IMG/VR virus record: IMGVR_UViG_3300028536_000014
Coordinates: 62,001 to 126,000 of that record
DNA: 64,000 nucleotides
Direction: 5' to 3' (one strand)
Part shown: positions 4,560-54,306 of the stretch, one piece after another
Layout of the letters: every line of letters starts with the position of its first letter
How positions within the stretch are numbered: position 1 is the first letter of the stretch
Translations under genes and position numbers: made by a program
Notes under the pieces: generated by a model
The model's input: only the letters and a program-made list of their open reading frames with translations
Told to the model about the DNA's origin: nothing
Databases searched by the model: none

Positions 4560-4641
4560 TTTACCCCCAATATAAAAAGATTACAAAATTTATAGATCAC
4601 ATCCACAGACCTTTTATTGAGGTCTGTGGATGTGATCTGAA

Positions 4642-5146: not shown

Positions 5147-6358
5147 TTAGCGTTTGTTATTCGCTAAGAGCACGATACCTTTCGGTTCGTTCGCATTGTG
5201 ATAGGCTATCGCCGCTTCATCTCGGATGTTTATAGCAGCATTAACATCTCGATCATGGGTTTGATGACAGTGAGGACAGGTCCAAGTTCTTTCTGACAAC
5301 TTTAACTTACGATCAAGACGTTGTTGACAACTGCTACAAATATGACTTGAAGGGTAATAAGCATCCATAACGACTACAGAACAATGTCCAGATTCCTGGG
5401 CTTTATAGATCACGAAGGTCTTAAAGGTAGACCACGCTGCGTCTGAGATGTGTTTCGCTAATCGATAGTTTTTGACCATATTACTAGGCACAAGCGCTTC
5501 GAGTCCGATGACTTGGTTTTCGTCGACGAGGATTCGAGAGAGTTTGTGTAGATGGTCTTGACGTGCGTTAGCGATATGTTGGTGTATGGTAGAGACTTTA
5601 AGACAGGCTTTCTTGCGGTTATGGCTACCTTTGACTTTACGAGCTAAGGATTGTTGAGCCCGTTTAAGCTTTAAAGCGTATTTTTTAGTATGATGAGGGT
5701 TATCGATCTTGGTACCGTCTGAGAAAGTAAATAGAGACGTTAGACCTGCATCGATACCCGTAATTTTAGTACCTTTAGTAATATTAAATTCGTATTCACA
5801 AATAAAACAAACATAATACTTACCACTAGCTCTTTTAATTATAGTTAAAGAAGAAGGAGCTGATGGAAGTTCACGGTGCCATTCAATTTTAATAGGGTTA
5901 TCACATTTCGCTATGGTGAATTGACCATTTCTTATTTGAAAACCATCTCTCATTAAAGAGAATGTTTGTCGACCTTCTTTCTTTTTAAACCTAGGATACC
6001 CAATCCTCCGTCGGAAGAAATTAGAATAGGCTGTACCAAGATGTAACATCTCTTGCTGAAGGGCTGTAGCGATAGCTTCTTTTAACCATTCACAAATTGG
6101 GTCTGCTTTATAAATAGGAAGTCGTTTAACAAAATCATACCCGGTGGAGATAGGACGAGAAAGGTTAATAACCCCTTGTTCTTTTAAAGCTAGCCAGTTT
6201 TCATATTCTAGTTTAGCTTCTGATAATCCTCGATTAAAGACATATCGACAACATCCGAAGTTCTTAGCCAAGAATTCTTTCTGACTATCTGTAGGATATA
6301 TCCGAAAACAATAACCTTTTTTCATAATTGACGATATCCAATGTACTTCTACATACAA
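5147..6358 (-). mobile_element. tnpB: IS200/IS605-family RNA-guided endonuclease TnpB, no tnpA nearby
   Basis: N-terminal HTH (YCFRIYPT..Q...FGCCRYVFN), RuvC residues GIDAG, GLEAL and DRDVNAAINI, zinc finger CSSC...CPHC. Confidence 0.92.
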
Positions 6359-6532
6359 TATAGATACCAGTGAGATATAATTTTAGTGGTGCACTACGAT
6401 ACTCCGGAGTCCCATCCATATCGGTGGGTCGTCAGACGCACACGCGCAACGTCATGCTGTGTTTCCGTGTCTGACTAATGGAACTTCAGGTGATGTAAAA
6501 ACACTCATTATTGTATTCATTTGATTTTAGTC

Positions 6533-7135
6533 CTAAACATGTAGAATCGAATCCTCATTCTTTATAGACGTAATCGTATTAACACGTCTAAATTTTAGAC
6601 TGTAATGATTAAATCGACCATTAAGAATCATGTTGATTAAATCATAAATCCTATTATCATTACGATTAATAATATCGCCATTCTTATCAGTGATATCTTT
6701 TACATAAAAAGAATATCCATGAACTGTTGAATGACCATTATCAATACGAATACTACCACTCATCATCACGTGACAATTCAGTTTTAGATCTTCTTTGACA
6801 ATTTGGTTAAGTGTTCCAGATAGAGGTTCACCAACAGCTGTAAGCGTATTCTTATCGATAAGAATAGAACTGTAATTAGCATTCAAACTCAATCGCATAA
6901 ATTCAGATGAATTTTTCAATACGAATTTGAACTGTGGTAGATTCTCAGTTTGAAACCACAATATTTGATTATCGATTTTCATCGAGAACTGATAAAGTTG
7001 AATATCGGGATGAAGTCTATCAGTACGACTTACACTGCCGTCTTCAATAGCTTCATTTGTCAAAGTGATATCGAGAACATCTCGCATATCGTCAAACGGT
7101 AAAATGATCTTGTAGATTTTACTTTCGTCAGTCAT
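6533..7135 (-). CDS. Hypothetical protein
   Basis: 200-aa ORF. Confidence 0.55.
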   Translation of the reverse strand: MTDESKIYKIILPFDDMRDVLDITLTNEAIEDGSVSRTDRLHPDIQLYQFSMKIDNQILWFQTENLPQFKFVLKNSSEFMRLSLNANYSSILIDKNTLTAVGEPLSGTLNQIVKEDLKLNCHVMMSGSIRIDNGHSTVHGYSFYVKDITDKNGDIINRNDNRIYDLINMILNGRFNHYSLKFRRVNTITSIKNEDSILHV

Positions 7136-10576: not shown

Positions 10577-10652
10577 TGATCCTTTCCCCCGCAACAATCA
10601 AGGCGCTGTGAGAACTCGTCTCGGGCCAGGTTGTATCTAAGAGGAAAGGATC
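10577..10652 (-). repeat. Hairpin element, copy 1, carrying the 21-mer CTGGCCCGAGACGAGTTCTCA
   Basis: Exact 21-nt match at 10609-10629 and 12598-12618; closed by GATCCTTTCC/GGAAAGGATC. Confidence 0.8.
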
Positions 10653-10895
10653 CTGTCTTTTTCATTGCTGCATTGATCCTTCACTTCTGATCTCTGCAAA
10701 CAGATGTGTGCACACACATCGTCATTTTCATTTGTTGTCAGCACGGTGCATAGGTGAGTTCACGTGCGCATATCATTTCTTCCTGTCATAAGCTACCTAC
10801 TTGTTATTTCCACAAGCCGGATTTTTCAGTAGCCCAAACGTGTTTAGTATCCCTAAAATATTAAACACAACCTTCCGCTATTGGCCCTACAAAAC

Positions 10896-11041
10896 TGGTC
10901 AGTCACGGTGTGATTCGAACACACAGCCAAATTGGTCCTTACGCCGAACACCCAATTTGGTACCAACTTTCCATTATCGATATCATGAGTCTCGATAACT
11001 TCTTTGCTAGTAACGTCTACCGTAATTCCGCCACGCGACTG
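10896..11041 (-). tRNA. Non-canonical 146-nt tRNA-Leu-like RNA with extended anticodon and variable arms
   Basis: Acceptor (C)AGTCGCG/CGTGACT(G), discriminator A, CCA; Leu-type D arm TGGCGGAATTACGGTAGACG; T arm GTGTG-TTCGAAT-CACAC. Confidence 0.7.
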
Positions 11042-11049
11042 TTTGAAAA

Positions 11050-11153
11050 TGGCGATCACTCTAGGATTCGAACCCAGCCCCTTTCCGATCGTGTTCAATA
11101 GGCTCTTTGTTTCCTATCGTTCCTATAGACCGAACTGCTTCATCCCAGTACTC
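11050..11153 (-). tRNA. Non-canonical tRNA-like RNA (104 nt), identity unclear
   Basis: T arm CTGGG-TTCGAAT-CCTAG, acceptor GAGTACT/AGTGATC (6 of 7 pairs), G-CCA end; no 7-nt anticodon loop. Confidence 0.55.
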
Positions 11154-11241
11154 GTCTTATACTCAATCAAAGATACTCTCTAGAATTCTCTCTGATCTTT
11201 CTTTGGTTTTCCTGTTCTCTTAGCTTAGTGACCATTGACTA

Positions 11242-11703
11242 TTATGCCGCTAAAGCGGCATCGATTGCATTGATGGCATATAACGTAAAATTAGTTATTT
11301 CTTTACCATCAGAACCCAATTGTGTTATTCCAGCCGTACGAAACTTAACCCTGTCTTTGAATGCATTGGGGTTTTGGTTGAATAGATTTTGTAAAACTAA
11401 CCCTTGTGGTGTTCTAAGAAGACGTATATCGGCAAATAAACTACCATCTTTAATGGTCAGTCTTTCTACGCGATGACTAACTTTGTCTTCAGGAACTTTA
11501 AGAGCGTCGTATGGATCTGGTAACGTTCTTAAATCAGGCATTCCAATTTGTCCAAATATCGGAAACTCACTATTCTTTAAAGTCCGAGACACAACGTCAG
11601 ATGAATAGATTCTGTCATTTTTATTGGGTTTATCCAACGTCATGACTTCGACATCATGTACGATAATGTCTCGTGTAATACAATCGCAATCTTCATCGTA
11701 CAT
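11242..11703 (-). CDS. T4 gp21-like prohead protease homologue with apparently substituted catalytic residues
   Basis: NKNDRIY...FGQIGMP...VSHRV..L..KDG.L.ADIRLL.TPQG..L...FRTAG, resembling NRNGR.Y/GELGHP/VSH/TP.G/SSRG. Confidence 0.55.
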   Translation of the reverse strand: MYDEDCDCITRDIIVHDVEVMTLDKPNKNDRIYSSDVVSRTLKNSEFPIFGQIGMPDLRTLPDPYDALKVPEDKVSHRVERLTIKDGSLFADIRLLRTPQGLVLQNLFNQNPNAFKDRVKFRTAGITQLGSDGKEITNFTLYAINAIDAALAA

Positions 11704-11739
11704 GATGTCTCCTTGAATTCATCACAAATTGTTTTGAAA

Positions 11740-11994
11740 CTAGTGTCCGTAATTACAACCGATCTTGGCTCTTTGACCATTCACTTCGATAATGGTATCG
11801 AAAATACCGCAACATCCTTCATCACGAGCTCTTTGATATTTATCCAAAGCAGCCTCGTCATTCAGATATGCGAATCGACGATTATCGATGCAGTGATCGT
11901 CCACATGTCTTTCCATCCACTCAAGAGCTTCTTCTTGAGTAGCAAAACTTCTTTCTTCTTCTCCGTCGGATGACGTGAAATCGACGATTGTCAT
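11740..11994 (-). CDS. Hypothetical acidic protein
   Basis: 84-aa ORF. Confidence 0.5.
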   Translation of the reverse strand: MTIVDFTSSDGEEERSFATQEEALEWMERHVDDHCIDNRRFAYLNDEAALDKYQRARDEGCCGIFDTIIEVNGQRAKIGCNYGH

Positions 11995-12216
11995 ATCGGA
12001 TTCCTTGGATGATGATAGTTAAGCTACTTCAAAAGCTTCGATATGCTTCGAAGAAATAGTCGCGATTAACGGAAAGAAATCAGGGTCCTTCCCTTCTTTG
12101 ATCCATTGTTTGTAAAACTTCTTTTTGAACCTATAGTTCTTCCATGGAACAGATAGATTGTAAAAGAACAAATTGACTTTCTTACGAAAGGTCATACATC
12201 ATCTTTTAATGTTAAG

Positions 12217-12290
12217 TGGTTGGAGGACTAGGACTCGAACCTAGATTAATGACGTCAAAGGACACCGTCCTACCATTAGACGATCCTCCA
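12217..12290 (-). tRNA. tRNA-Gln(UUG)
   Basis: U1-A72 acceptor TGGAGGA/TCCTCCA, anticodon loop CTTTGAC, CCA. Confidence 0.9.
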
Positions 12291-12566
12291 TCATAATCAC
12301 TTAATCATTAGAAAGAAAATAGGAACAGTTCCGGTTTCCAGGTAAAAACACAAACGTGTCATTTCATACTCCAATCAATAAACCCTTAGACGAGCACACG
12401 ATCACTACGCCTGGTATCACTGGTCCGAATGGGGTTGCAGGGGGGACCCATTCAGCTGAGGCGAAGTTTAACCAAATACCTTCATAATCCATAATTGTAA
12501 CAACGACATCATTAGAATTAGAAGGTTTTCATGAACGTGTGCTCCTCTAAAGATTCACATTAGAAG

Positions 12567-12643
12567 ACCCCTTTCATCATTAACGTCACTGGCACAATGA
12601 GAACTCGTCTCGGGCCAGCCGTCCTTATTTGACGAAAGGGGTC
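12567..12643 (-). repeat. Hairpin element, copy 2, carrying the 21-mer
   Basis: GACCCCTTTC/GAAAGGGGTC stem enclosing CTGGCCCGAGACGAGTTCTCA. Confidence 0.8.
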
Positions 12644-13268
12644 ATGCCACATGCAATATTGGTTTCAACTCCCTTTGAGCGCGATGCTCTCTGCAGAGTT
12701 CCACCATCGAAAGTGTACGAACACTCTCTCTTTCTGCTTTTTCAGCGTGCGGTTAATACACAAGTTAGGACTAGTTGGTTTTGAGTGCCGTAACACTCAC
12801 CTAGGTAGTCCTTGCTGGCTTATGCCAGTAGCCGCGTAACAAACAACACGGGTTTACAAATTATGACCCATATCGTTACGCGGCTATTCGGAGCCTAACG
12901 TCTTCATGTGAGGTATCTCCTCTTGTTGGCAGGTCAAAAGACTTCTCGTAAGAAGCCTGAACATGATGTCGGTGGCGAAAGGTAAGCGGTACCCTCGCAA
13001 CCTGTGACATCACACCTTTCTTACAACGTTTGCCCGAACGAGCTTATGGATTCTCCCCATCTGGCTCGGTGATCTTTCGATCTATTGCCGAAACAGTTCG
13101 GCATAACAACACGGCGGGCAGGTGCTCCTTAACGCCTTTCGGCATACCCTATCTCGAAAGATAGATCAGTCATTCAAGAACAAGAGCGGATCCTTGAATC
13201 AAGACGTAGTGATCGCCGATACCTCGGAGTATCGGTTTAGTTACCGTTAACGTCATACTACCATGCTA

Positions 13269-13360
13269 AGATCAGTGAAGGATGCTATTTCAAGGACGAC
13301 TCCACCGTAATTGGCATCACGGCTTCAAAGTCTCGCATCTATCCTACACATCAAAGATCC
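13269..13360 (-). rRNA. 23S rRNA L1-stalk (H76-H78)-like segment embedded in a phage ncRNA; not a complete rRNA
   Basis: TTGATGTGTAGGATAGATGCGAGACTTTGAAGCCGTGATGCCAATTACGGTGGAGTCGTCCTTGAAATAGCATC: 56 of 74 nt identical to the E. coli sequence as recalled, differences keep pairing. Confidence 0.85.
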
Positions 13361-14150
13361 GTTAAAGTTTCAACAGTACTAAACTAAACCGCGTGAAAGA
13401 AAACACGGGGCGTAACACCGCACCGAAAGAGGGTGAGTATGTTCGTATAGCCCCAGATCATGATCCGCATTCTGTTACCCCAGTCACGTAGGTTAGAGAA
13501 TAACACGAATCACGATTGTTTTCTTTTGTTTAGCGTTCCTGCTAACGATTGCATTGGGTTAGTCCCACGTCCACATTCTGGATGCTCATTTCCAGACTCA
13601 GTTTTCGATGGAGCTTTGGTAACATTCTTTTCGTTGACCTTACCATTTTGATAAGGCTAGAAGTAATAGCGACTTCAAAGAACATGTCTATTGATCAGTG
13701 TATCAAGCACAGACCGTTACGTTGGTCTGTGTTGAATCCCGCTCCAGTTTCCCGGCTACGGCTTCTCCCGTCGATGTTCACTTTTACGAAAAGAATTCAT
13801 TGCTTGGTATAAAGCTTGATGGTAATGGCTTCGCCAGTGTTTATACCACCTGCGCATGGACGATCTCTCCTCCACGACTCACCATTGTTACGAGGCATGC
13901 ATTTGCCCAACACCATTCTGCATTTACCAACCAATACATATATCTGACTTTTTTGATCAGATTAAACGATAATACAAGCACTCCATTAAGCACTCGCGTA
14001 GTGCTCAACAGGCTGCTTCCTCAGACGTAAATAGATCACAAGGTCTACATATCTGAATAGACAACTTGACTAGTCGTGGCCACAACCAATCCGTAGGGTT
14101 TGAATAGTTTCGAATGCCTTCGCTACTACCCCTTCGCAAATCACCCTTAG

Positions 14151-14211
14151 CTGTTATACTTATTTTAATGTTAAAATAAGTTTCGTCCCTTAAAGGACTC
14201 GTCAGTAACAG
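14151..14211 (-). ncRNA. Hammerhead ribozyme (type I)
   Basis: CTGTTA-CTGACGA-GTCC(TTTAAG)GGAC-GAA-ACTTATTTTAA(CA)TTAAAATAAGT-A-TAACAG; predicted cut after GUA, between 14157 and 14156. Confidence 0.9.
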
Positions 14212-14225
14212 TTTTATTCTACAAA

Positions 14226-14301
14226 TGGTGCCCCTGTCTGGTACCGAGCCAGATTCCCTGGCTTACAAAGCCAGACCTCATCCATTAAAGGCTTCAGGGG
14301 C
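14226..14301 (-). tRNA. tRNA-Thr(UGU), atypical T loop
   Basis: GCCCCTG/CAGGGGC acceptor, anticodon loop TTTGTAA, T loop CTCGGTA, CCA. Confidence 0.85.
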
Positions 14302-14308
14302 ATGTTTG

Positions 14309-14782
14309 TCAATTGACGATATTATTTCTCGTCTTGTATTCCTGAATAGCGGCGTTGATTTGATCGTCTGTCAGAAGAAGAACATCGACAATTGAAAAAT
14401 ACATGACGAGCGTTTCATCACCTGTGATTTCTCGTATTTCTTCAACGAAAATGCTATACTTGGCTGGTTCACCAGGAAACAAACCGACAATGATTTCGAG
14501 GCTCACGTTAGAATCATCACGAATCGTACCATCATCATTGGCTGGATACCAATCCAAGCGATACTCGGAGTCCTCATGACATCCAAGATCTTCTTTACCA
14601 TCGATGATCAGATCGAACTCATGTTCACCGAGTTCGACAGAACCAAGACCGTTCGGTTCAGAACTCAAAGCTTCGGTTATCTTGGCAACATATTGAGCGA
14701 AGCGAGCTTTCTCTCGAATGTTTTTCCGAGAATCTTTCTCTACTTCTTCTTCGTACTCTTCATCAAGTTCAGTCATGTTCAA
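14309..14782 (-). CDS. Hypothetical acidic protein
   Basis: 157-aa ORF. Confidence 0.55.
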   Translation of the reverse strand: MNMTELDEEYEEEVEKDSRKNIREKARFAQYVAKITEALSSEPNGLGSVELGEHEFDLIIDGKEDLGCHEDSEYRLDWYPANDDGTIRDDSNVSLEIIVGLFPGEPAKYSIFVEEIREITGDETLVMYFSIVDVLLLTDDQINAAIQEYKTRNNIVN

Positions 14783-15062: not shown

Positions 15063-15706
15063 CTTACCACTATAGCTTTCGCTACCATTAAGAAGTATTC
15101 AGCCTTCACTCTTATAGAGTTATTAACTCAGAGCTATTCCTTACTAACTTCTACATGTTTGTGGTCTGGACTGTACCTTAACCTTAGTTCCAACAGAACT
15201 TTTGATGACTCAGCTACACGGTTTCCCGGCTTTTTATCGAAGTTACTTCGCTAGTCAAAGAAATGCTAATTACTAGAATTAGATCATCGCAATGAAAACT
15301 TTAGGTTGTTGCCTACCAGTCTCTACACGTTTTCTTCTCAAGAACAGTCTGTGGAGATCTAATGTTCTATCCCGGTATCATTACTCCCCAACCATTTCTG
15401 GTCACCGGCTCACATCTACCATACGGTAGCTATTGAAGAATTTCGCTCGGTATTAGCATATGAACTGCAACAGACAACTCACTTAGCTTTCACCGACTTT
15501 GACAACATTCACCCTAGCCCTTACCCCGTTGATATTATCTCTGGACGATGATATCTCTATCACCTATTTATAATGGATGCTAGTTTATACGTCTTTCGAT
15601 TGAGTTGTTTCATGAGGGTAGTGAGAGCTTCAACTCACATAAGCTTTTATTCTTCCAACTCTGTTTTACCAACTCATTTTTCGTAGGTGCTCAAATTAAA
15701 GTACTT
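15063..15706 (-). ncRNA. Group I intron, ORF-less (644 nt), in the tRNA-Leu anticodon
   Basis: P1 CTT|AAG with TTTGAG (U.G at the splice site); core motifs AAAGTCGGTGAAAGCT, GCTAATACCGAG, GTAGAGACTG, AAGGTACAGTCC; terminal G. Confidence 0.88.
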
Positions 15707-17599: not shown

Positions 17600-17620
17600 T
17601 CAGCTAGAATATATGTGACT
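17600..17620 (-). promoter_or_regulatory. Putative phage promoter motif
   Basis: tcagctagaatatatgtgact; same 21-nt spacing at 18177, 28193, 29713, 31244, 33995, 38525, 54254 and 56298, mostly intergenic. Confidence 0.6.
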
Positions 17621-17686
17621 GAAATTTTTTAATAAGGTGAAAAAAAAAGACATCCAAGAATAATATCCGGATGTCTTTTTATGTTT

Positions 17687-18176: not shown

Positions 18177-18197
18177 TCAATTAGAATATATGTCATT
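18177..18197 (-). promoter_or_regulatory. Putative phage promoter motif
   Basis: tcaattagaatatatgtcatt. Confidence 0.6.
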
Positions 18198-18219
18198 AAG
18201 ATCTTTTCAGAACTTGATA

Positions 18220-36593: not shown

Positions 36594-37408
36594 CTACCAC
36601 TATAGCTTTCGCTACCAATAAAAAGCGTTCAATGTTTCACTCGTATTGAGTTATTAGCTCAACGTGCTATTATTTACTAACTTTACATGTTTGTGGTCTT
36701 GACTCTTTTAAGCATATAGCTCAGCTTCATCTCGCTAGAGGTTCTATTAGTTACTTGCTAGACTTACACTTGGTCTGATTCTTAAAGATTACTTCCGTCT
36801 GTCGGGAAAGATATGACTCTTTACTCCTAAGATTTCATCTATTCAGAAATAAGACTCTTCGCTTCCCGTCATCACTTTCACGCTGTATTAGGCGCTATTT
36901 AGCTTGTTGCCATTGAGTCTCTACACGTTCTAATCCAATTACCTGTTGTGCACATTTACTGTCACAACGCGGGTATAAACACGGTATATACATCACCGCA
37001 CTCGTTTAACCGATCAGTAATTCAGATTCGTTTCGCTCGGTATTAGCGTAGGATGGACCACTCATTCATTGAAGACTTTTTGTGTTCCCTATAGCTATAA
37101 CCGACTTTGACAACATTCACCAACATCTATATTAAGACATGATCGCCATGGAGACTAGGATTTCTCCGGTATTCCATATAGCTATTATCCATATCCTTCA
37201 GCTTGCTGAAATCACATTTCTCAAAGAAGACTGAGGGTCTGCTATTCAGTAGATGTTTATACGTCCTTTCGGATTGAGTTGTTTTCGCATTTTTAGATGG
37301 GGGTTCTCATACTTCCCCGGCAGCTCAGATTTAGGCTGAGTCCCAAACTTTTACCGTGCCGATTTTACCAACTCATTTTTCGTAGGTGCCCTTACATTAC
37401 ACGGTTAA
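36594..37408 (-). ncRNA. Group I intron, ORF-less (815 nt), paralogous to the tRNA-Leu intron
   Basis: Six shared blocks with 15063-15706; P1 TCT|TTA with TAAGGG; P7 GACTC/GAGTC; terminal G. Confidence 0.85.
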
Positions 37409-38085: not shown

Positions 38086-38547
38086 CTACTGAATCGTGCT
38101 GGGATGGAACTCACGCCCCATGATTTTGGCAACTTTTTCCATTACCAAATCCATACTTTTGTTGGCTTTGACAACTTTTGCTTTGATTCGATTGAAATCT
38201 TCCAGCCGATTCTCTTCTTCGAATTTCTTGCGAGTTGCAGGATCAGTGATGAAATAGATACACGGTCCTTTCATCATGGAAGCTTCCATGCCCTTGCTGA
38301 CGATGTGAGAATTCTGGATCATCTTCTTCGTACACAACACCCTGTTCAGAATCGGTAATGCGTATTTTTCGAGACCATTAACAGAATACTCGTAGTCATA
38401 AGCAAACTTTTCGATCTCTTTGAGAGGATCGGCATCGACAGTGATTGTTTTTCCATCCGATAATCCAATTTCAACATTCATAGAGTTTCCTGATTGATAG
38501 AGAAAGAATATAAACCACCTATGCTCAATTAGAGTATATATAACCAA
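38086..38547 (-). CDS. Hypothetical protein (true start probably MNVEIG)
   Basis: ORF; promoter motif overlaps the annotated 5-prime extension. Confidence 0.5.
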   Translation of the reverse strand: MVIYTLIEHRWFIFFLYQSGNSMNVEIGLSDGKTITVDADPLKEIEKFAYDYEYSVNGLEKYALPILNRVLCTKKMIQNSHIVSKGMEASMMKGPCIYFITDPATRKKFEEENRLEDFNRIKAKVVKANKSMDLVMEKVAKIMGREFHPSTIQ

Positions 38548-38571
38548 AAACTTTTAACAAAGTGATTAGTT

Positions 38572-43399: not shown

Positions 43400-45019
43400 T
43401 TAGAATCCATCTAAATAATTTACTAATTCCCACTGTCCACCATTAATCGTAGCATCATATTCTAAGATTACTTTAGATTTCTTTCCGCTAGCAATGATAG
43501 CTGGAGAAATAAAAGTACTGGATGTGGGTACTACGATAGCTGCATCTAACGTCAGATTTCGTGCACCACCAGAAGCTGTAACCCAAATATTCAATTGAAC
43601 ACCATCAGCTGGACTAGAAGGTGGTGCTAATATCACATCGCCTGTTGCTATAATGCGACTATGCGTGTTTTGACTACCGTCTAATGTAACGGTAGATGCA
43701 TAAATTACACTACCGTAAGGTGTTGCAGGAACACCCAACATAGTTTGAACTTGCGTTGGAGTTAGGTCAAAAGTAAATGCAGTACTTCCTGTATTATTGC
43801 CTTTGATTGTATTCGAGGCACTTTGGATATCAGACGATTCCCAACGTTCCCAAACCGTTCCGTTATTGACAACTTTGTCATTCACAGCAAACGTAATGGA
43901 GCCAGCACCAAAATCATAAGATCCAGCAACCGTCACTTCGTAAAGATGACCTCCAACTCCTGTATCTGTGTTAGCTAATGTTGGAGTGTTCGTTGATGCG
44001 TTATATGTTCCAATATATTCTATCGGATTAGGAATCGCAGCAATTGCTGTACTGATTGCTGTATCTGTCTGAGTGTTAGTATAAACATCCGTAATTCCAA
44101 AACCAGAGACTGTAGTAGGTTTACTAGCTAAAGCACTCCAGCTTGTAGCAAGTGTTGCAACTGAAGAACCCCAAGCTCCAGCGGTTTTTTGACCATAAAG
44201 ATCACCGGTTGTTGTATCGATATAAACATCGCTATTATTACCAGTTCCGGAACTAGGAGCACCGCTACCTGTAATAACAGTACCACCTTGAACTCCTTGG
44301 ATACCTTGAGGACCTCTGATATTACCAGTAACAGAACCCCAGCTAGTAGTTTTGGGTCCATAAACATCACCATTAGTACCGTTAAGATAGAAATCATTAA
44401 CGAGACCAACAGAACCTGATGGTGCACCAGATCCGATACGCCAGATTGATCCAGCGGTTCCTTTCATTACAAGGATCTGAGCACCCCAAGTTCCACTGAC
44501 TTTCTTATACAGATAACCATTAGTAGTATTGATGTAATAATCACCATTGATACCATTACTGTCATTTGGTGCGATTGTACCTTGATAAATCGTACTACCT
44601 GCAGTACCTGCAACACCTTGTGGGCCTATCAATGAGTTCAAGAAATCAGTTTGAGTACCAGTATTACCATTATCTAACCAACTTTGGTAAGCGGATTCAC
44701 CAGTTGCACCGATCAAAGAAGTTAGAAACTCTGATTCGTTTCCAACGTTCCCATTAGCTAACCATTCTTGGTAAGCAGACTGTCCAGTAGCTCCAACTAG
44801 ACTATTTAAAAAATCTGTTTGATTTCCACTATGACCATTAGAAATCCAGACATCGTAAGCAGATGCACCTGCTGCACCAGCTTCGCCATCATGTCCATAG
44901 ATCGCCGTGATCGGAACACGCGCATTACGATCACTAATATTCTGAGCGTTGGGATTAAAGATAGGAACATATTCAGCACCTGTCAGAATAGACAGAATTG
45001 GCATAACTGAAATTTTCAT
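43400..45019 (-). CDS. Tail fibre-like protein with collagen-like and SAYxxW repeats
   Basis: Three G.SAY..W..NG..G....FL.SL.G repeats, G.GAP....G...D.Y...TG..Y repeats, GPQG triplets. Confidence 0.7.
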   Translation of the reverse strand: MKISVMPILSILTGAEYVPIFNPNAQNISDRNARVPITAIYGHDGEAGAAGASAYDVWISNGHSGNQTDFLNSLVGATGQSAYQEWLANGNVGNESEFLTSLIGATGESAYQSWLDNGNTGTQTDFLNSLIGPQGVAGTAGSTIYQGTIAPNDSNGINGDYYINTTNGYLYKKVSGTWGAQILVMKGTAGSIWRIGSGAPSGSVGLVNDFYLNGTNGDVYGPKTTSWGSVTGNIRGPQGIQGVQGGTVITGSGAPSSGTGNNSDVYIDTTTGDLYGQKTAGAWGSSVATLATSWSALASKPTTVSGFGITDVYTNTQTDTAISTAIAAIPNPIEYIGTYNASTNTPTLANTDTGVGGHLYEVTVAGSYDFGAGSITFAVNDKVVNNGTVWERWESSDIQSASNTIKGNNTGSTAFTFDLTPTQVQTMLGVPATPYGSVIYASTVTLDGSQNTHSRIIATGDVILAPPSSPADGVQLNIWVTASGGARNLTLDAAIVVPTSSTFISPAIIASGKKSKVILEYDATINGGQWELVNYLDGF

Positions 45020-45031
45020 AAAGTGTGTTCC

Positions 45032-47131
45032 TTAAACCTTACTAATGTTGTGTGTATAAATGTATTTACCTGCAACACTACCTGCAGCGTAAACACCTTT
45101 ATTCGTAATCGGACGAACAAGCTGTAAGCCGATTTCACTAATGGATTCAACTGTATCCCAATATGGAATAGCATTTTCTTCACCAATACGAACTGGAAGC
45201 TTCATACCTACTTTCAGTTCTGAAGACATAATTGTTGTATGATCTTCTAAACATAATGGCGTTGTTGTAGAAAATCCTAATTCTGCACCAGATGTCATTA
45301 CAATCCAGATACAAGGTTGCATCTCAGCATCACGAATAGAAACGATTGGTTTATCAAGGAATTCATAAGTATCCTCATCCATACCGTAGAGACTCATACC
45401 GACATAAGCGATATCTGCTGTTATATCAGATTTCAGATACATGTATGTCATTACACATCCACCACCATATCCGCCACCACTTGGCGGTGGTGTTGAACCA
45501 GAGAAGGTTAATGTTGTAACGGCAGCAGCAGTGATCGGTGTAGTTAAATACCCTATGACCTGCCAAGTAAAGAAGTTGTCATATGGATTACCAGACGAAC
45601 CAGAGTCTGTTTGAATCTTCACATAAACTTGACATCCTCGGCTTAACGTTGTTGGGGCTAATGCTTGACATTGAACTCCAACTTGATCACCAGATCCGTA
45701 AGCAGCAGTCGAAAGAAGAGTTTGTTGAACACTTGAAGAATCTGCACGTGCATAGACGCTACAAGGGTTTTGATGAGCTAAAATACCTGTCACTACCAAA
45801 ACAGCTGTAACTGGAATACTACTATCTACATTGGCTAGTGCAGTTGAAAAATCAGCATTCATCCAAACACCTGAGGTATTTGGGAACGTACAAATAACAG
45901 GTTGATCCAAAAGAATAAGACCAGGAGGCTCTATCCATCCAGTGTCATAATCAGCACCACTAAGTTTTACAAGAAGTTGTCCAGCTGATCCGCCAGCAGC
46001 AACACCAGCACCGGAACCAGTAGGCCCTTCAATATTACCGGTAGGACTGCCCCAGCTACCGGAGACTTTATGGTAAATGTCTCCATTATCATCATTAAGG
46101 TAATAATCACCATTGATACCAGTACCAGAACTAGGTACACCAGAACCGTTATACCAAACAGATCCAGGTGTACCAGTGCCAGTTGGACCCACAATGTTTG
46201 CGATGGGTGACCCCCAGCTACCAGAGACCTTGTGATAAACATCACCATTAGTGTCATTTAAGTAATAGTCACCATTAATACCAGTACCAGAACTAGGTAC
46301 TCCTGATCCATTGTACCAAATTGATCCAACAACACCAGAACCAGCCGGTCCTACAATATTAGCAACTGGAGAACCCCAGCTACCAGAAAGTTTCTGGTAA
46401 ACATCACCATTGGTGTCATTGAGGTAGTAATCGTTGTTAGCACCCAAACCACTACTAGGTGCACCAGCACCATTATACCAATGAGCACCAGTAGGTCCTT
46501 GAGGACCAATGGTTCCCTGAGGTCCTTGAGGTCCTGTTCCACCTGTTGCACCATTTTGACCGACAAGTGATGCAAGGAAGTCATTCTCAGTACCAGAGTT
46601 ACCAGCTTGTAACCATATCTGGTAAGCAGATAAACCTGTGATATAAGTAATAAAATCATCCTCAGTACCAGTATGTCCTGCACTGAGCCATATATCATAA
46701 TCAGAAAGTCCTTGAGGACCAGTCAATGAGTTAATGAAATCTTGACTAGAACCAGTATTACCAAGATCCAACCAAACCTGGTAAGCGGATTCTCCTTTTA
46801 GACTAGTGACGAAATCTTGTTCTGTACCTGTGTTACCAACGTCTAACCAACTCTGATAAGCGGATTCACCATTGGTACCATTAACACCATCTGTACCAGC
46901 AGCTCCTTTAATAGAGTTGATAAAATCAGTCTCGGTACCTGTATTACCGATATTCAACCAGCTCTGATAAGCAGAAAGACCCTGAAATCCACGTTCTCCC
47001 TGAAGACCTTGGAATAGTTCAACATTTACCTTACGGTTCTGCTGACTAACGGTTGATTGGTTTGGATCATAGACTGGAACGTACTCCGCTCCACTGAGCG
47101 CAGTTGAAGTAACCATACTGCTGATGCGCAT
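45032..47131 (-). CDS. Tail fibre-like protein with C-terminal Hint (intein-like) domain
   Basis: Same repeat types as the neighbour; GGG|C at 45457 opens a ~140-aa domain ending YTHN-ISKV. Confidence 0.7.
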   Translation of the reverse strand: MRISSMVTSTALSGAEYVPVYDPNQSTVSQQNRKVNVELFQGLQGERGFQGLSAYQSWLNIGNTGTETDFINSIKGAAGTDGVNGTNGESAYQSWLDVGNTGTEQDFVTSLKGESAYQVWLDLGNTGSSQDFINSLTGPQGLSDYDIWLSAGHTGTEDDFITYITGLSAYQIWLQAGNSGTENDFLASLVGQNGATGGTGPQGPQGTIGPQGPTGAHWYNGAGAPSSGLGANNDYYLNDTNGDVYQKLSGSWGSPVANIVGPAGSGVVGSIWYNGSGVPSSGTGINGDYYLNDTNGDVYHKVSGSWGSPIANIVGPTGTGTPGSVWYNGSGVPSSGTGINGDYYLNDDNGDIYHKVSGSWGSPTGNIEGPTGSGAGVAAGGSAGQLLVKLSGADYDTGWIEPPGLILLDQPVICTFPNTSGVWMNADFSTALANVDSSIPVTAVLVVTGILAHQNPCSVYARADSSSVQQTLLSTAAYGSGDQVGVQCQALAPTTLSRGCQVYVKIQTDSGSSGNPYDNFFTWQVIGYLTTPITAAAVTTLTFSGSTPPPSGGGYGGGCVMTYMYLKSDITADIAYVGMSLYGMDEDTYEFLDKPIVSIRDAEMQPCIWIVMTSGAELGFSTTTPLCLEDHTTIMSSELKVGMKLPVRIGEENAIPYWDTVESISEIGLQLVRPITNKGVYAAGSVAGKYIYTHNISKV

Positions 47132-48228: not shown

Positions 48229-48329
48229 AATGAACTCCTTTAACTAGCAAAAGATAGATTGATTAATAAGAAAAAAAAAGATAGATCTGAGCTTTAAGCT
48301 CAGATCTATCTTAATGTAATTCACAAATG

Positions 48330-49607
48330 TTAAGCTGAGATGAACCCAACTTGCTTTTTCGATTTCGTGTGAATGTTATTCACACTTTCGTAGTTCAATG
48401 CTTCAGCCAGAGTCAAATTACCTACGATATGGTGATCTTCCGGAAGCTCTGATAGACCGATCGCCAATCGTGCCGTACTGGCCTCAGCAACTGTCAGTTT
48501 CCTGAAATTGATCACCATGAAGGTACGACCAGAACGAATCAGCGCTTCGTCGACCTGATTCACATTCGGGAGATTGGTCGAGATAATCAACTTCCGACGT
48601 GTCTTGATGATACCATCCGACATATTGAGAAGTGCTGACATCTTGCTATTACCATTTTGTCGACAGCCAATGTAATTATCGGCATCTTCAAGGGTAACTA
48701 AAGTTCCATCACCGAAATCACCGATCCAATTGCTAATGTTAGGTGATTCCAATGCATTCTGATCATTACAAATTCCGAAATGTTCAAATTCGCATTCCAG
48801 CATGATCGTGCGAGATAAGGTTGACTTGCCAGTACCTGGAGGACCAACCAGAAGTAGGATGTTCTGCTTGGAAGCCATGAAATCTTTAACCAGTTTCTTA
48901 ATACCATCAGTGATAAACGGATAGAAACTATCATGACCAACGTCAGCACCTTCAGATTCGATCGTACGATCGATAACCTTGAAAGTTCCATCGTTAGCAA
49001 CACCGGTTAGGATATGAACCTTCTTGATGCTTGGAGCTTGGAACCGTTCTAGGAAATGCTTTTCCCAACGCTTTACTTTATCGTGGTCACCGCACACCAC
49101 GATCGAGTAAGCTTCTTTGATATTGTAATGTGTCAAATGAATGACTAGATCAGGAATGTTGGGATTGGCTTCATCAACGATATAACCGCGCCAAACCAGA
49201 TTGGAAAAGAACTGGGTTTTGAAATTATACTCTTTGAAAAGAGCCATGAAGGTTTCGATCTTCATGTTTTCAGAACCGATGATATTGTAAATGAATGTAC
49301 CAGTATTCAGACCATGAGCGGCACGATAAGCCCAGACATATTCCACAAACCGTGTAGTATCGACATCCATCGACACCATGATTTCGGGTAAATTCTCGAT
49401 GAACGGTTTTCGAAATAGTTCAATTTCACCTTTATTGGTGAAATGCATTTCGCTATCCCACATTAATCTCAGTCCATCTTTCTGAAACTTATGATCGTTA
49501 TTTTTCAGAACCTTTTTGCTGTTATTGAAATAATACAGCAAACAAGCAACAAAAAGAATCGAGACAACAATGCTGATGGCCCAAATCGTTAGATTCATAG
49601 TAATCAT
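48330..49607 (-). CDS. Membrane-anchored AAA+ ATPase
   Basis: N-terminal TM; GPPGTGKS, LEDAD, LLN..DG, IISTN, DEALIRSGR. Confidence 0.85.
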   Translation of the reverse strand: MITMNLTIWAISIVVSILFVACLLYYFNNSKKVLKNNDHKFQKDGLRLMWDSEMHFTNKGEIELFRKPFIENLPEIMVSMDVDTTRFVEYVWAYRAAHGLNTGTFIYNIIGSENMKIETFMALFKEYNFKTQFFSNLVWRGYIVDEANPNIPDLVIHLTHYNIKEAYSIVVCGDHDKVKRWEKHFLERFQAPSIKKVHILTGVANDGTFKVIDRTIESEGADVGHDSFYPFITDGIKKLVKDFMASKQNILLLVGPPGTGKSTLSRTIMLECEFEHFGICNDQNALESPNISNWIGDFGDGTLVTLEDADNYIGCRQNGNSKMSALLNMSDGIIKTRRKLIISTNLPNVNQVDEALIRSGRTFMVINFRKLTVAEASTARLAIGLSELPEDHHIVGNLTLAEALNYESVNNIHTKSKKQVGFISA

Positions 49608-50035
49608 TTCTTCTTAGTGGTTGAAATTTTGGTTTCTTTTAGGAAATGCTTTTCCCAATAGGAAACACATGTTGGATCTCCAAAGATTACAATCGTGTAA
49701 GGTTCAGTAGGGTTATAGTGAGTCAAATGAATGATCAGATGTGGAACGTCGTCTGGATCTGTTTCATCAACGATATAACCGCGCCAGACCTTGTTAGATA
49801 AGAACTGGGTTTTGAAATTATACTCTTTAAAGAGTTCAATGATGGACTTGATTGTCACATTGTTAGAGAGATCGATCTCATGTTGGAATAATTTCGTATT
49901 CAAACCACGAGTGGCACGATAAGCCCAGACGTACTCTGTAAATCGACTTGTATCGATATCCATCGTAATAACGATAGCTGGGAGGGTGTCCAAGAATGGT
50001 TTATTGTGTACTTCCAAAAAGTCATTGGAATTCAT
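49604..50035 (-). CDS. Stand-alone duplicate of the AAA+ ATPase N-terminal domain
   Basis: KPF...LP.I...MD.DT.RF.EYVWAYRA..GLNT...FKEYNFKTQF.SN.VWRGYIVDE shared with 48330-49607. Confidence 0.75.
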   Translation of the reverse strand: MNSNDFLEVHNKPFLDTLPAIVITMDIDTSRFTEYVWAYRATRGLNTKLFQHEIDLSNNVTIKSIIELFKEYNFKTQFLSNKVWRGYIVDETDPDDVPHLIIHLTHYNPTEPYTIVIFGDPTCVSYWEKHFLKETKISTTKKK

Positions 50036-50492: not shown

Positions 50493-50832
50493 CCTTACCT
50501 TCAAGTAGAATCGTTACTTCTACTCCGTGTTGATACACAGCTCTAACTTTCATTAGAAGAGGAGAACATATCACGATCTCTTTCGAGACCCCTTCCATTT
50601 CAGCTCACTTGAGCCTACTCCGCGCTACCGGATGTTCGTTGAACGTTTTTCTGACGGATCAGAAACTTCGCTGCGGATTATCCAATCTTCTTATTTGTTA
50701 CCATACCTGAGTGATTAGTTCAGCCATTGTTATATCACTATAACAACTTGGTATAAGAAGCTCTAAAGGACTTTCCCGACAATTAGAAAGGTGCTATTCA
50801 GATATCACTATCTGAAAGGACTAAAACTGTTA
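50493..50832 (-). ncRNA. Group I intron, ORF-less (340 nt), in the RNAP catalytic motif
   Basis: P1 GAT|TAA with TTAGTC; AATTGTCGGGAAA, AATCCGCAGC, GTTCAACGAACAT/ATGTTC (P7); terminal G. Confidence 0.92.
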
Positions 50833-52071
50833 ATCAGCGTTCATGCTCGTTGTGATCAAAATACTGACTCCAAATGTCAGATCCTTCGGATCGTTTTTAA
50901 CTCTTGGAATATAAACCTTCTGAATGGAACCTTGAAGCAAAGATGGAAATCGATTAAACAAGACTGGATAACGCCCATCTTTAGTATCAGAGATAATTTC
51001 TTTCAGATATTGATCAAGCAGTGGATGATAAATTTCAGTATGAGATAGAAGAAGTCCCACAGCGTCATTAATCAACATTCCACTTTTCTTGATAAGCTTG
51101 TTAATGAGCATCGGTCTGAAAATCGTTAAACCAACACCCCAAGGTATTTCAATTTCATCATATCGATGTGCGTCTGTTATCGAAGAGATAACAGCTCGTG
51201 CGGAATAATCGAATCGAGATCCACCGATATAATGTCGAAAGAGTCCAGACTTCTTAGCAACGATCGTCTTGAAATAACTGTCATAAAACTTACAGCTAAG
51301 AAGATACATCGCTCTAGCTGTACGATTTTCTTTAACAGAAACTGTTTGATTATGAAAATCTTTATCGATCGATACCAACATTTCGATAGCTTCAAGTGCT
51401 AACGGAACGGTACTGTCGATATAAGTGGCCAGAGATGTTTTCTCGATAACCAAGAGAGACTTATTCAGTAAAGGAATATAATCCGAGAACAAAATATCTT
51501 TCTTAACTGTTAAAAGATCAGCAAGATAATCTCGTCCTATTCCTTTGATTTTAAAATCTTTCAGACTCATCAAGAATTCGATGATCGATTGAAAATTCTG
51601 AACGAAGTAATTATATCCACGTTGAATACCAGCTTGTTCAATTTTATCTACGACATCAGGACGATTGATCTGAGGTGAATATGTTGTATCAGTTAACCAT
51701 CTCAAGATGCTAAATTTTGATTTGCTAAATCGATAATCCAACATAATCCAGATTATTGGTGACATCAATTTCTCAACACCAATAGGTTTTCGAAACCAAA
51801 CCAACGGTTCAATGGTGTTTTCAATCGCTGCACTGACGAGTGTGTCGCAGTGTTCACAAATCGTATTCTTACTGAATTCTCCTTTTGTCATTCCACATCG
51901 ACACGAAGGAAGAATTGTCACCATGTCACTTGAATAAGTTGTGGTGATTAATTGTTCAATACGTTCACGATCTTTCGTGGTAGTGTTAAGCAAGTCGTTT
52001 ATGATAATCGGAGGGTTCTTGAGCCCCTCGAACATCATATTGTTATCGATCAAACTCTGGATAATAGGCAC
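50833..52071 (-). CDS. Exon 1 of the non-virion RNA polymerase beta-prime-like subunit (phiKZ gp55-like); spliced product 473 aa
   Basis: Zinc finger CRCG...CEHC, K.GLFR..I.GSR.DYSARAVIS, FNRFPSL, ends SMNAD. Confidence 0.9.
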
Positions 52072-54253: not shown

Positions 54254-54274
54254 TCAGATTAAGTATATGTGATT
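54254..54274 (-). promoter_or_regulatory. Putative phage promoter motif
   Basis: tcagattaagtatatgtgatt, just past the chimallin terminator. Confidence 0.6.
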
Positions 54275-54306
54275 AAAATATTTTAAGAATGGTATTCAAT
54301 AAAAAA

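What the first reader, a model, noticed from the sequence alone, without database searches (positions are those of the whole stretch)
10577..12643. A 21-nt motif repeated exactly at the tip of two unrelated long hairpins, 2 kb apart
CTGGCCCGAGACGAGTTCTCA occurs at 10629-10609 and 12618-12598. The closing stems differ in sequence (GATCCTTTCC/GGAAAGGATC versus GACCCCTTTC/GAAAGGGGTC) but not in shape, so the apical domain is selected. One copy is inside the rRNA-like RNA and one is in a separate small RNA downstream of the odd tRNAs. The motif resembles enterobacterial 23S near nt 2770-2788 (CCCCGAGATGAGTTCTC, from memory), which may be a third rRNA-derived piece or chance. Inference: a shared protein-binding, export or packaging tag.
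Basis: partly seen in the sequence, partly recalled or inferred. Interest (0 to 1): 0.65.

Follow-up and report, generated by a model that had tools for sequence, protein, structure and literature searches.

The report
rRNA-derived hairpin pair in jumbo phage
Two copies of a ~75-base RNA hairpin in an uncultivated giant phage carry an identical 21-base tip that appears to descend from a piece of bacterial 23S ribosomal RNA, so the phage seems to keep ribosome look-alike RNAs, but their function is untested.

Summary
CTGGCCCGAGACGAGTTCTCA occurs exactly twice, on the - strand, at the apex of two 75-78-nt hairpins (10652-10578 and 12643-12566).

The hairpins are not unrelated. They are paralogs with the same three-helix shape. 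Outside the motif they are only 47% identical, and four base pairs are kept through changes on both sides.

The resemblance to 23S rRNA holds up against a real E. coli 23S. For copy 1, the best local alignment anywhere in the 23S (both strands) is nt 2754-2800 (p about 0.001).

Copy 2 sits where that piece belongs in a remodelled tail of an rRNA operon on the same strand:
- an L1-stalk mimic (Rfam LSU, 63.6 bits);
- the copy 2 hairpin;
- a degenerate 5S-like piece (p about 0.001);
- tRNA-Gln.

No Rfam family matches the hairpins, and the Rfam 5S model does not recognise the 5S-like piece. No other genome searched carries the element; it appears only in assemblies of this one phiKZ-like 245-kb phage.

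Best reading: an rRNA-derived structured RNA module that was duplicated, with its apex kept by selection as a recognition surface. It may act as a decoy for a factor that binds 23S domain VI. The ancestry and the selection are supported. The function is inference. Interest is moderate to high, but this is a single genome with no functional data.

The parts
10578..10652 (-). Hairpin copy 1 (75 nt). It has a 13-bp closing stem P1, short P2 and P3 helices and an apical GAGA/UCUC stem-loop. It is followed by AAUUUUUUU and a second small hairpin, then the RBS and ATG (10517) of ORF158.
   Evidence: 89.5 bits with model R1
10609..10629 (-). 21-nt motif, copy 1. The conserved block extends to 10602-10629 (28 nt).
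   Evidence: D10
12566..12643 (-). Hairpin copy 2 (78 nt). It has a 14-bp closing stem and the same architecture as copy 1. It forms the 3' module of a highly structured noncoding RNA.
   Evidence: 99.2 bits
12598..12618 (-). 21-nt motif, copy 2. The conserved block extends to 12591-12618.
13250..13410 (-). Mimic of the 23S rRNA L1 stalk (E. coli nt about 2062-2203). The Rfam LSU core match is at 13270-13359. The stems are kept through compensatory changes.
   Evidence: 63.6 bits, E 2e-16; z 13
12644..13249 (-). Structured noncoding body between the L1 mimic and hairpin copy 2. It has no recognisable rRNA sequence, but its length (653 nt from the end of the L1 match to the motif) is close to the 579 nt of 23S between the same points. 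It contains an odd tRNA-like element at 13077-13168.
   Evidence: (12555-13080 folds with z -7.0)
12361..12466 (-). Degenerate 5S rRNA-like remnant, enclosed by a long closing helix (about 12565-12536 pairing with 12400-12370).
   Evidence: top of 2554 windows, z 7.1; 2 of 2000 shuffles reach the score; z -3.8. It is NOT recognised by the Rfam 5S model.
12217..12290 (-). tRNA-Gln(UUG), the last element of the rrn-like series.
10900..11135 (-). Two tRNA-like genes upstream of copy 1 (Ser-like at 11050-11135, Pro-like at 10900-10990). They are found only at relaxed ARAGORN thresholds.

Best explanation
The two hairpins are paralogous modules of structured RNA transcribed from the - strand. They lie in the tRNA/ncRNA island of an uncultivated phiKZ-like jumbo phage.

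Their shared apex descends from the junction of helices H97, H94 and H98 in domain VI of a gammaproteobacterial-type 23S rRNA (E. coli nt about 2754-2800). Copy 2 still sits at the matching place in a captured and heavily remodelled tail of an rRNA operon: L1-stalk mimic, then hairpin, then 5S-like remnant, then tRNA. Copy 1 is a dispersed duplicate placed between tRNA-like genes and ORF158.

In both copies a new 13-14-bp closing stem presents the old rRNA segment as an exposed apical stem-loop. The native rRNA pairings are not reproduced.

The apex is held identical by purifying selection because it is a sequence-specific recognition surface. The most likely use is as an rRNA mimic or decoy for a host or phage factor that normally recognises this part of 23S. 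Candidates are a ribosomal protein, an assembly factor, or an rRNA-cleaving defence nuclease.

Shown: the two copies, their fold and strand preference, the compensatory stem changes, the sequence similarity to rRNA, and the rrn-like order.

Inferred: transcription, common descent from a captured operon, binding of a trans factor, and the decoy role.
For: 1. Selection on structure and apex. RNAalifold gives 20 consensus pairs. Four are kept through changes on both sides and one through a change on one side. Only 27 of 57 columns outside the motif are identical, so 21 consecutive identities are not expected by drift (0.47^21 is about 1e-7).

2. Strand. The G-U pairs in P1 work only on the - strand. 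The - strand folds better. All neighbouring genes and tRNAs are on the - strand.

3. rRNA ancestry.
- For copy 1, the best local alignment anywhere in E. coli 23S or 16S on both strands is 23S 2754-2800. It scores 43 and none of 300 shuffles reach it. Against the whole 23S, 1 of 500 shuffles reach it, Gumbel p 0.0009.
- blastn gives 29/36 identities, E 0.009, the second-best hit in the 7-kb island after the L1 stalk.
- For copy 2, the best location in the 23S is the same place, nt 2756-2787.
- Extension from a 7-nt anchor is significant on both sides against E. coli.

4. rrn-like order on one strand.
- L1-stalk mimic: 63.6 bits.
- Hairpin copy 2.
- 5S-like piece: the best 5S-like site of 2554 windows across the whole window, z 7.1; 2 of 2000 shuffles reach it; a Xanthomonas 5S aligns over nt 1-109.
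- tRNA-Gln.

5. The surrounding RNA is far more structured than shuffled sequence (z -7.0 and -3.8). This is not decaying junk.

6. Context from papers.
- H94 and H98 contact H1, and uL13 anchors H98 (PMC12274283).
- uL6 binds H97 and uL3 stabilises domain VI (PMC9687910).
- Defence nucleases that cleave rRNAs and tRNAs exist (bioRxiv 10.64898/2026.07.14.738597).
Against: - No Rfam model (LSU, 5S, ribosomal-protein leaders) matches either hairpin or the 5S-like piece, even in the most permissive searches.
- Copy 2 alone is not significantly similar to 23S (p about 0.1).
- Flank-only similarity, tested without positional constraint, is not significant.
- The match is good only to the Enterobacterales-type sequence. 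Aeromonas, Xanthomonas, Ralstonia, Acinetobacter and Priestia score 16-26. No 23S among 185,579 species genomes carries the 18-mer.
- The predicted fold does not reproduce H94, H97 or H98, so a faithful three-dimensional mimic is not shown.
- There is only one genotype. All other assemblies are identical apart from a single 1-nt gap, which lies outside the hairpins, so there is no comparative test beyond the two paralogs.
- There is no expression data and no binding data.
- No ribosomal-protein, RNase or RNA-binding gene was recognised nearby.
Confidence: 0.45

Rival explanations
1. The hairpins are RNA processing, stability or termination signals that mark the ends of units in the polycistronic tRNA/ncRNA transcripts. 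This would resemble the family of similar imperfect hairpins cut by RNase III between phage T7 early genes. Alternatively they could be sites for a phage endoribonuclease. The conserved apex would then be the nuclease's recognition element, and the rRNA resemblance would be incidental or merely historical.
For: - Both hairpins lie at boundaries. Copy 1 is between the tRNA-like genes and ORF158. Copy 2 is between the large structured RNA and the 5S-like domain and tRNA-Gln.
- Copy 1 is followed by a run of seven U.
- The rods, of about 20-25 stacked pairs with internal loops, are of the general kind RNase III accepts (general knowledge, not tested).
Against: - Copy 2 has no U tract.
- The genome's ordinary intergenic hairpins are a different class: perfect 14-20-bp stems with loops of 0-7 nt.
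- The terminator scan did not call either hairpin.
- RNase III does not need a 21-nt conserved apical sequence.
Confidence: 0.2
2. The apex is an RNA-RNA contact element, such as a loop-receptor or kissing-loop module. It would dock copy 2 in cis and copy 1 in trans onto the large structured RNA, or join RNAs into a higher-order particle, as in the multimeric ROOL and GOLLD RNAs found near tRNA genes in phages.
For: - The hairpins flank or belong to an unusually structured RNA (z -7.0) next to tRNA genes.
- The apex contains GAGA...UCUC, which could pair within one molecule or between two.
Against: - No partner complementary to the loop stands out on either strand of the window or in the E. 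coli rrn operon. The best duplex on the - strand is -19.3 kcal/mol, against a mean of -20.5 for shuffled loops.
- There is no Rfam match to ROOL, GOLLD, HEARO or OLE.
Confidence: 0.1
3. The hairpins are a neutral relic. A decaying fragment of captured rRNA was duplicated, or recently patched by gene conversion, and the identity of the 21-mer reflects recency rather than function. On this view the 23S and 5S resemblances to these small pieces may be partly chance.
For: - There are only two copies, in one genome, with no relatives.
- The covariance-model tests for rRNA membership fail.
- Copy 2 alone is not significantly 23S-like.
Against: - The flanks have diverged to 47% identity, yet every stem change is compensated. 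That requires selection on the fold.
- A 21-28-nt conversion tract with no flanking homology is unlikely.
- Three rRNA-like pieces in the correct order and orientation are unlikely by chance.
- The surrounding RNA is strongly structured.
Confidence: 0.1
4. The element acts at the DNA level. The two hairpins would be single-strand DNA structures recognised by a recombinase, a transposase (as at IS200/IS605-type ends) or a priming protein, and they would bound a mobile 2-kb cassette holding the 5S-like piece, tRNA-Gln, three small ORFs and the tRNA-like genes.
For: - The two copies are direct repeats 1989 bp apart that bracket a gene cassette.
- A TnpB (IS605 OrfB) gene is present in the window at 5147-6358.
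- The closing stems are nearly palindromic in DNA.
Against: - The TnpB gene is 4 kb away and has its own flanks. No TnpA or recombinase gene lies in or beside the cassette.
- The hairpins are about three times longer than IS200/IS605 end hairpins (general knowledge).
- The wobble pairs favour the - strand RNA.
- No copy of the motif lies next to the TnpB 3' end, where a guide would be.
Confidence: 0.07

Closest known systems
Bacterial 23S rRNA domain VI, junction of helices H97, H94 and H98 (E. coli nt 2754-2800)
   Same: Sequence. The motif matches 15/16 at nt 2772-2787. Copy 1 matches 29/36 over nt 2765-2800, and this is its best alignment anywhere in the rRNA genes. Copy 2 lies at the corresponding place between an L1-stalk-like piece and a 5S-like piece.
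   Different: The LSU covariance model does not recognise it. The native helices are not reproduced: the segments homologous to the 3' strand of H97 and the 5' strand of H98 pair with each other, and the partner strand of H94 is absent. The closing stem is new. The 18-mer is in no 23S of 185,579 species genomes.
rRNA-mimicking operator RNAs of ribosomal-protein operons (for example the L1 site in the L11-operon mRNA, and the L10 and L20 leaders)
   Same: These are short structured RNAs that copy a protein-binding piece of rRNA and compete with rRNA for the protein. This is the proposed working principle here. The same phage RNA carries a clear L1-stalk copy.
   Different: The hairpins are not in the leader of any ribosomal-protein gene. 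No ribosomal-protein genes were recognised nearby. No Rfam leader family matches. Binding is untested.
Host-derived translation RNAs carried by large phages (tRNA clusters, tmRNA)
   Same: The hairpins lie inside a tRNA island of a jumbo phage (five standard tRNAs plus tRNA-like genes). They are most simply explained by capture of host RNA genes.
   Different: These pieces come from rRNA. They are not functional copies but remodelled fragments. I found no description of phage-borne rRNA-derived modules in the paper searches I ran or in 50,697 deposited phage records.
RNase III processing hairpins of phage T7 early transcripts
   Same: They are a family of 60-80-nt imperfect hairpins with shared sequence, placed between transcription units.
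   Different: Cleavage is untested here. The conservation is concentrated in the apical loop rather than in the internal loop or stem. There are only two copies.
ROOL and GOLLD large ornate RNAs of phages
   Same: They are large, highly structured noncoding RNAs next to tRNA genes in phage genomes.
   Different: There is no covariance-model match. The RNA here contains recognisable rRNA-derived pieces.

Membership tests
Bacterial LSU rRNA (Rfam RF02541) fragment | Scores against the LSU covariance model at the site | tested here: not met
   There is no LSU hit at either hairpin with E up to 10, even when only 111 nt were searched. Only the L1 stalk at 13270-13359 scores (63.6 bits).
Bacterial LSU rRNA (Rfam RF02541) fragment | Primary-sequence similarity to a defined 23S segment beyond chance | tested here: met
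   For copy 1, the best alignment in the whole 23S and 16S on both strands is nt 2754-2800, p about 0.001, and blastn gives E 0.009. For copy 2, the best location is the same but is not significant alone (p 0.1).
Bacterial LSU rRNA (Rfam RF02541) fragment | Native secondary structure (H94, H97, H98) preserved | tested here: not met
   The predicted folds pair the H97-3'-like segment with the H98-5'-like segment. The partner strand of H94 is absent (comparison with E. coli helix numbering from general knowledge).
Bacterial LSU rRNA (Rfam RF02541) fragment | Position in rrn gene order (23S, 5S, distal tRNA) | tested here: met
   For copy 2, the order on the - strand is L1-stalk piece, hairpin, 5S-like piece, tRNA-Gln.
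5S rRNA (for the neighbouring piece at 12361-12466) | Scores against the Rfam 5S model | tested here: not met
   There is no hit at E up to 10 in a 151-nt search. It is supported only as a sequence-level remnant.
Intrinsic (rho-independent) terminator | G+C-rich stem, short loop, U tract directly after the stem | tested here: not met
   The region enclosed by the closing stem is 49-50 nt. Copy 1 has AAUUUUUUU but copy 2 has no U tract. Neither is called by the terminator scan.
Ribosomal-protein leader / autoregulatory rRNA mimic | Lies in the 5' leader of a ribosomal-protein operon and matches a known leader family | tested here: not met
   No ribosomal-protein genes were recognised among neighbouring ORFs. 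No Rfam leader hits.
Ribosomal-protein leader / autoregulatory rRNA mimic | Binds the cognate ribosomal protein | not testable with these tools
   This needs EMSA or a pull-down.
IS200/IS605 transposon-end hairpins or TnpB guide RNA | Subterminal hairpins directly flanking tnpA/tnpB; guide adjacent to the 3' end of tnpB | tested here: not met
   TnpB is at 5147-6358, 4-6 kb away. There is no motif-like sequence near its 3' end. No transposase lies in the bracketed segment.
CRISPR repeat mimic (RNA anti-CRISPR) | Sequence equals or nearly equals a CRISPR repeat found as arrays in bacterial genomes | tested here: not met
   The 18-mer scan of 185,579 species genomes gave two single chance hits and no arrays. 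No Rfam CRISPR-DR hit falls on the hairpins.
RNase III processing hairpin (T7 type) | About two turns of imperfect duplex between cistrons, cleaved by RNase III | tested here: inconclusive
   The shape and the intercistronic position are compatible. Cleavage is not testable here.
ROOL / GOLLD / HEARO / OLE large RNAs | Match to the family covariance model | tested here: not met
   No hits.

The most novel reading that the evidence does not exclude
A jumbo phage carries a purpose-built 'pseudo-rrn' RNA. It would be a chain of independently folding rRNA look-alike modules: an L1 stalk, a minimal copy of the domain VI junction (present twice), and a remodelled 5S. During infection these would soak up ribosomal proteins or assembly factors, or draw off defence nucleases that cleave rRNA. 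The 21-nt apex would be the bait of one such module.
Probability: 0.3. Interest if true: 0.8.

Novelty: new variant of a known kind. Interest (0 to 1): 0.6.

Why it matters
Large phages are known to carry tRNAs, tmRNA and some ribosomal proteins. phiKZ proteins are known to dock on the ribosome. I found no description of phage RNAs built from pieces of rRNA.

If these modules bind ribosomal proteins, assembly factors or rRNA-cleaving defence enzymes, they would be a new, RNA-based way for a virus to manipulate or protect translation. They would also be a natural set of minimal rRNA fragments that still carry recognition information.

The hairpin is small (75 nt). It has a sharply defined 21-nt candidate recognition site and a built-in control, since the two copies have different stems. 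That makes the idea directly testable by pull-down.

Tried and rejected
1. More copies or relatives.
- Exact and degenerate scans of IMG/VR with a 21-mer, a 16-mer with Y, and a 15-mer.
- An 18-mer scan of JGI metagenomes and of 185,579 species genomes.
- All returned only this phage, plus chance hits in coding sequence and one genuine 23S.
- The covariance model R1 found nothing else in the window or in 98 fetched loci.

2. Relatives through proteins.
- ORF158, ORF153 and the capsid fragment find only the same contig.
- The capsid fragment has no tblastn hit in deposited phages.
- Other assemblies of the phage are identical apart from a single 1-nt gap outside the hairpins, so there is no usable microdiversity.

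3. Antisense target. No complement to the loop stands out above shuffled loops on either strand of the window or in the E. coli rrn operon.

4. Known RNA families. None matches.

5. Other short 23S matches in the island. These include 12814-12827 = 23S 2329-2342, 13085-13097, 13132-13143, and 10746-10798 against 23S 2718-2762. They are at chance level or not collinear.

6. A 14-nt exact 5S match at 58792-58805 (+) has no Rfam support and is not in the rRNA-like array, so I treated it as chance.

7. Flank-only similarity to 23S, without positional constraint, is not significant. Only the anchored extension is.

8. A scan of IMG/VR with a conserved 23S 16-mer, meant to harvest diverse 23S tails, gave one real 23S only. 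Plasmid-borne rrn copies were used instead.

9. Neighbouring proteins as candidate partners. There are no Pfam or PDB sequence matches for ORF158, ORF153 or ORF84.

10. A phiKZ-type promoter-like repeat does not occur near the hairpins.
Full report
**Observation**

The 21-mer CTGGCCCGAGACGAGTTCTCA occurs exactly twice in the 64-kb window, both times on the - strand, at 10609-10629 and 12598-12618. No further match appears with up to 3 mismatches, and none is expected by chance. A scan allowing up to 7 mismatches gave nothing credible.

Each copy sits at the apex of a long hairpin. The exact limits are 10652-10578 (75 nt) and 12643-12566 (78 nt). As - strand RNA they fold at -31.5 kcal/mol (z -2.8) and -39.0 kcal/mol (z -4.6). 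The + strand versions are weaker, because the closing stems contain G-U pairs that become A-C mismatches on the other strand. All surrounding genes and tRNAs are on the - strand.

**The two hairpins are paralogs**

- They align end to end and share one architecture: a 13-14-bp closing stem P1, an internal loop, a short P2, an internal loop, a GGC/GCC helix P3, and a terminal GAGA-CGAGU-UCUC stem-loop.
- RNAalifold finds 20 consensus pairs. Four are kept through changes on both sides and one through a one-sided change.
- Outside the motif only 27 of 57 aligned columns are identical. An unbroken run of 21 identities (28 nt at 89%) therefore indicates purifying selection on the apex sequence, on top of selection on the stem shape.
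- Between the two 1-kb neighbourhoods, the only significant shared sequence is the 21-mer.
- A covariance model built from the pair finds just these two in the window with all filters off. It finds nothing in 98 other loci.

**Source**

The window is part of a 244.7-kb contig, assembled in IMG/VR and from JGI soil metagenomes and, as a shorter 39-kb contig, from a Logan run. The overlapping parts are identical apart from a single 1-nt gap.

It is a phage: there are tail-fibre proteins, a helicase, a phiKZ-type major-capsid fragment and HNH endonucleases. It has no close relative in IMG/VR or among 50,697 deposited phages. One small neighbouring ORF has homologues in phages of Pseudomonas and Enterobacterales, a weak hint at a gammaproteobacterial host.

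**The rRNA lead**

I fetched a real E. coli rrn operon.

- The motif matches 23S nt 2772-2787 at 15/16.
- For copy 1 the similarity extends to 29/36 over nt 2765-2800 (blastn E 0.009). This is the second-best hit of the whole 7-kb RNA island, after the L1 stalk.
- The best Smith-Waterman alignment of copy 1 anywhere in 23S or 16S, on either strand, is nt 2754-2800. It scores 43; none of 300 and 1 of 500 dinucleotide shuffles reach it, Gumbel p about 0.001.
- For copy 2 the best location in the 23S is the same (nt 2756-2787), but the score is not significant alone (p about 0.1).
- Extension from a 7-nt anchor is significant on both sides against E. coli. Flank-only similarity without positional constraint is not.
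- The match is specific to the Enterobacterales-type sequence. Five other taxa score much lower. No 23S in 185,579 species genomes contains the 18-mer.

**Context that raises the prior**

On the same strand, the noncoding stretch 13410-12217 reads in rrn order.

1. A clear L1-stalk mimic, matching 23S nt about 2062-2203 (Rfam LSU 63.6 bits, E 2e-16). Its stems are kept by compensatory changes.
2. About 650 nt of very strongly structured RNA (z -7.0). This is close in length to the 579 nt that separate the same two points in 23S.
3. Hairpin copy 2.
4. A degenerate 5S-like piece at 12466-12361.
   - It is the top-scoring 5S-like site of 2554 windows on both strands of the whole window (z 7.1).
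   - Two of 2000 shuffles reach its score.
   - A Xanthomonas 5S aligns over nt 1-109.
   - It is enclosed by a long helix (z -3.8).
5. tRNA-Gln.

The Rfam 5S and LSU models do not recognise the 5S-like piece or the hairpins, even in minimal-length permissive searches. These are therefore remodelled derivatives, not functional rRNA.

Three rRNA-like pieces in the right order and orientation make common descent from a captured rrn tail the simplest reading. Copy 1 is then a dispersed duplicate of the hairpin module. It lies downstream of two tRNA-like genes and 60 nt upstream of ORF158.

**How it may work**

The hairpin does not rebuild the native rRNA helices. The segment homologous to the 3' strand of H97 pairs with the segment homologous to the 5' strand of H98. 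The H94 3'-strand sequence is left in the apical stem-loop without its rRNA partner. A new closing stem carries the whole structure. In effect the old junction sequence is displayed at the tip of a rod.

In the ribosome, H94 and H98 contact H1, and uL13 anchors H98 (PMC12274283). uL6 binds H97, and uL3 stabilises domain VI (PMC9687910).

My best-supported mechanism is that the apex is a sequence-specific recognition surface for a factor that normally reads this part of 23S, making the hairpin a mimic or decoy. The same RNA carries an L1-stalk copy, which fits a multi-module 'ribosome look-alike' RNA.

Candidate clients are ribosomal proteins, assembly factors, or defence nucleases that cleave rRNA and tRNA (such enzymes exist: bioRxiv 10.64898/2026.07.14.738597). 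phiKZ-type phages are already known to target the ribosome with proteins (PMC10914614).

All of this functional part is inference. I give it about 0.3. I give about 0.7 to the narrower statement that these are selected, rRNA-derived structured RNA modules.

**Rivals**

- *Processing, stability or termination signal.* Both copies lie at unit boundaries, and copy 1 has a U7 tract. But copy 2 has none. The genome's ordinary intergenic hairpins are a different class, with perfect 14-20-bp stems and tiny loops. The terminator scan calls neither.
- *RNA-RNA docking or kissing module.* No complementary partner stands out.
- *DNA-level site or transposon end.* A TnpB gene is in the window, but it is 4 kb away, no transposase lies in the bracketed 2-kb segment, and the wobble pairs favour RNA.
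- *Neutral relic with recent conversion.* This is contradicted by the compensated stems and by the strongly structured surroundings.
- *CRISPR-repeat mimicry.* Rejected because no genome carries the motif in arrays.

**Novelty and verdict**

No Rfam family, no deposited phage and no other metagenomic contig searched here carries the element. My paper searches found no description of phage-borne rRNA-derived modules.

The principle is known: rRNA mimicry by small RNAs, and capture of host translation RNAs by large phages. I therefore rate it a new variant of a known kind.

'Unrelated hairpins' is wrong. The 'binding, export or packaging tag' idea remains untested.

The main weaknesses are the single genotype, the failure of model-based rRNA membership tests, and the absence of any expression or binding data.

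Noticed in passing
window 13250-13410 (-): A clear mimic of the 23S rRNA L1 stalk (Rfam LSU positions 2126-2215, 63.6 bits). Its stems are kept by compensatory changes. No deposited phage record has anything similar; the only hits were contaminating bacterial 23S.
   Followed up: yes
window 12361-12466 (-): A degenerate 5S rRNA-like remnant between hairpin copy 2 and tRNA-Gln. It has deletions in the helix III / loop C and helix IV regions and sits inside a long closing helix. It is significant at the sequence level but is not recognised by the Rfam 5S model.
   Followed up: yes
window 5147-7135 (-): A 200-aa ORF (6533-7135) matches only the middle of the phiKZ-type major capsid protein (Pfam PhiKZ_MCP positions 189-365 of 635; phrog_3231 positions 272-448 of 746). 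It is immediately followed by a complete TnpB (IS605 OrfB / Cas12f-like) gene at 5147-6358. The capsid gene appears to be interrupted by an insertion element or an intron-like element.
   Followed up: partly
window 15151-15571 (-), 50541-50852 (-), 36595-37389: There are group I intron matches: 59.5 bits at 50541-50852, and 43.3 bits (below the gathering score) at 15151-15571. Segments of 15065-15690 are repeated at 36595-37389 with 84-100% identity, which suggests a third, paralogous intron-like element.
   Followed up: no
window 14152-14226 (-): A hammerhead-like match (RAGATH-1 hammerhead 34.8 bits, below the gathering score of 56.3; type I hammerhead 23.4 bits). It directly abuts the 3' end of tRNA-Thr (14226-14301).
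   Followed up: no
window 10900-11135 (-) and 13077-13168 (-): tRNA-like genes seen only at relaxed ARAGORN thresholds: Ser-like, Pro-like, and one with a 4-nt anticodon call. The last lies inside the rRNA-like RNA.
   Followed up: partly
window 14500-14600 (-), inside ORF 14309-14782: A possible second remnant of the L1-stalk flank. 14500-14519 matches 23S nt 2189-2207 at 18/20, and a gappy alignment covers nt 2091-2207. Its significance is unresolved, and the 157-aa ORF there has no family match.
   Followed up: no
window 17600-17640, 18177-18217, 38525-38565, 54254-54294: A 41-nt repeat in four intergenic places. On the - strand its core reads ACATATATTCTA (exact in two copies, variant in the others), which resembles the phiKZ early-promoter motif as I recall it. 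None lies near the hairpins.
   Followed up: partly
window 3493-61301, about a dozen sites (for example 4594-4638, 48278-48312, 54307-54340, 61262-61301): Perfect 14-20-bp intergenic hairpins with loops of 0-7 nt, some followed by U runs. These are the genome's ordinary terminator or stability hairpins and are clearly a different class from the two studied here.
   Followed up: partly
window 49020-49409 and 49610-50002: About 390 nt repeated with a 590-593-nt offset at 72-79% identity, at the 5' end of the AAA-ATPase ORF (48330-49607) and just upstream of it, next to the group I intron at 50541-50852.
   Followed up: no
window 43400-47131 (-): Two adjacent tail-fibre-like ORFs (539 and 699 aa) built from internal repeats with periods of 84 nt and 162 nt.
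   Followed up: no
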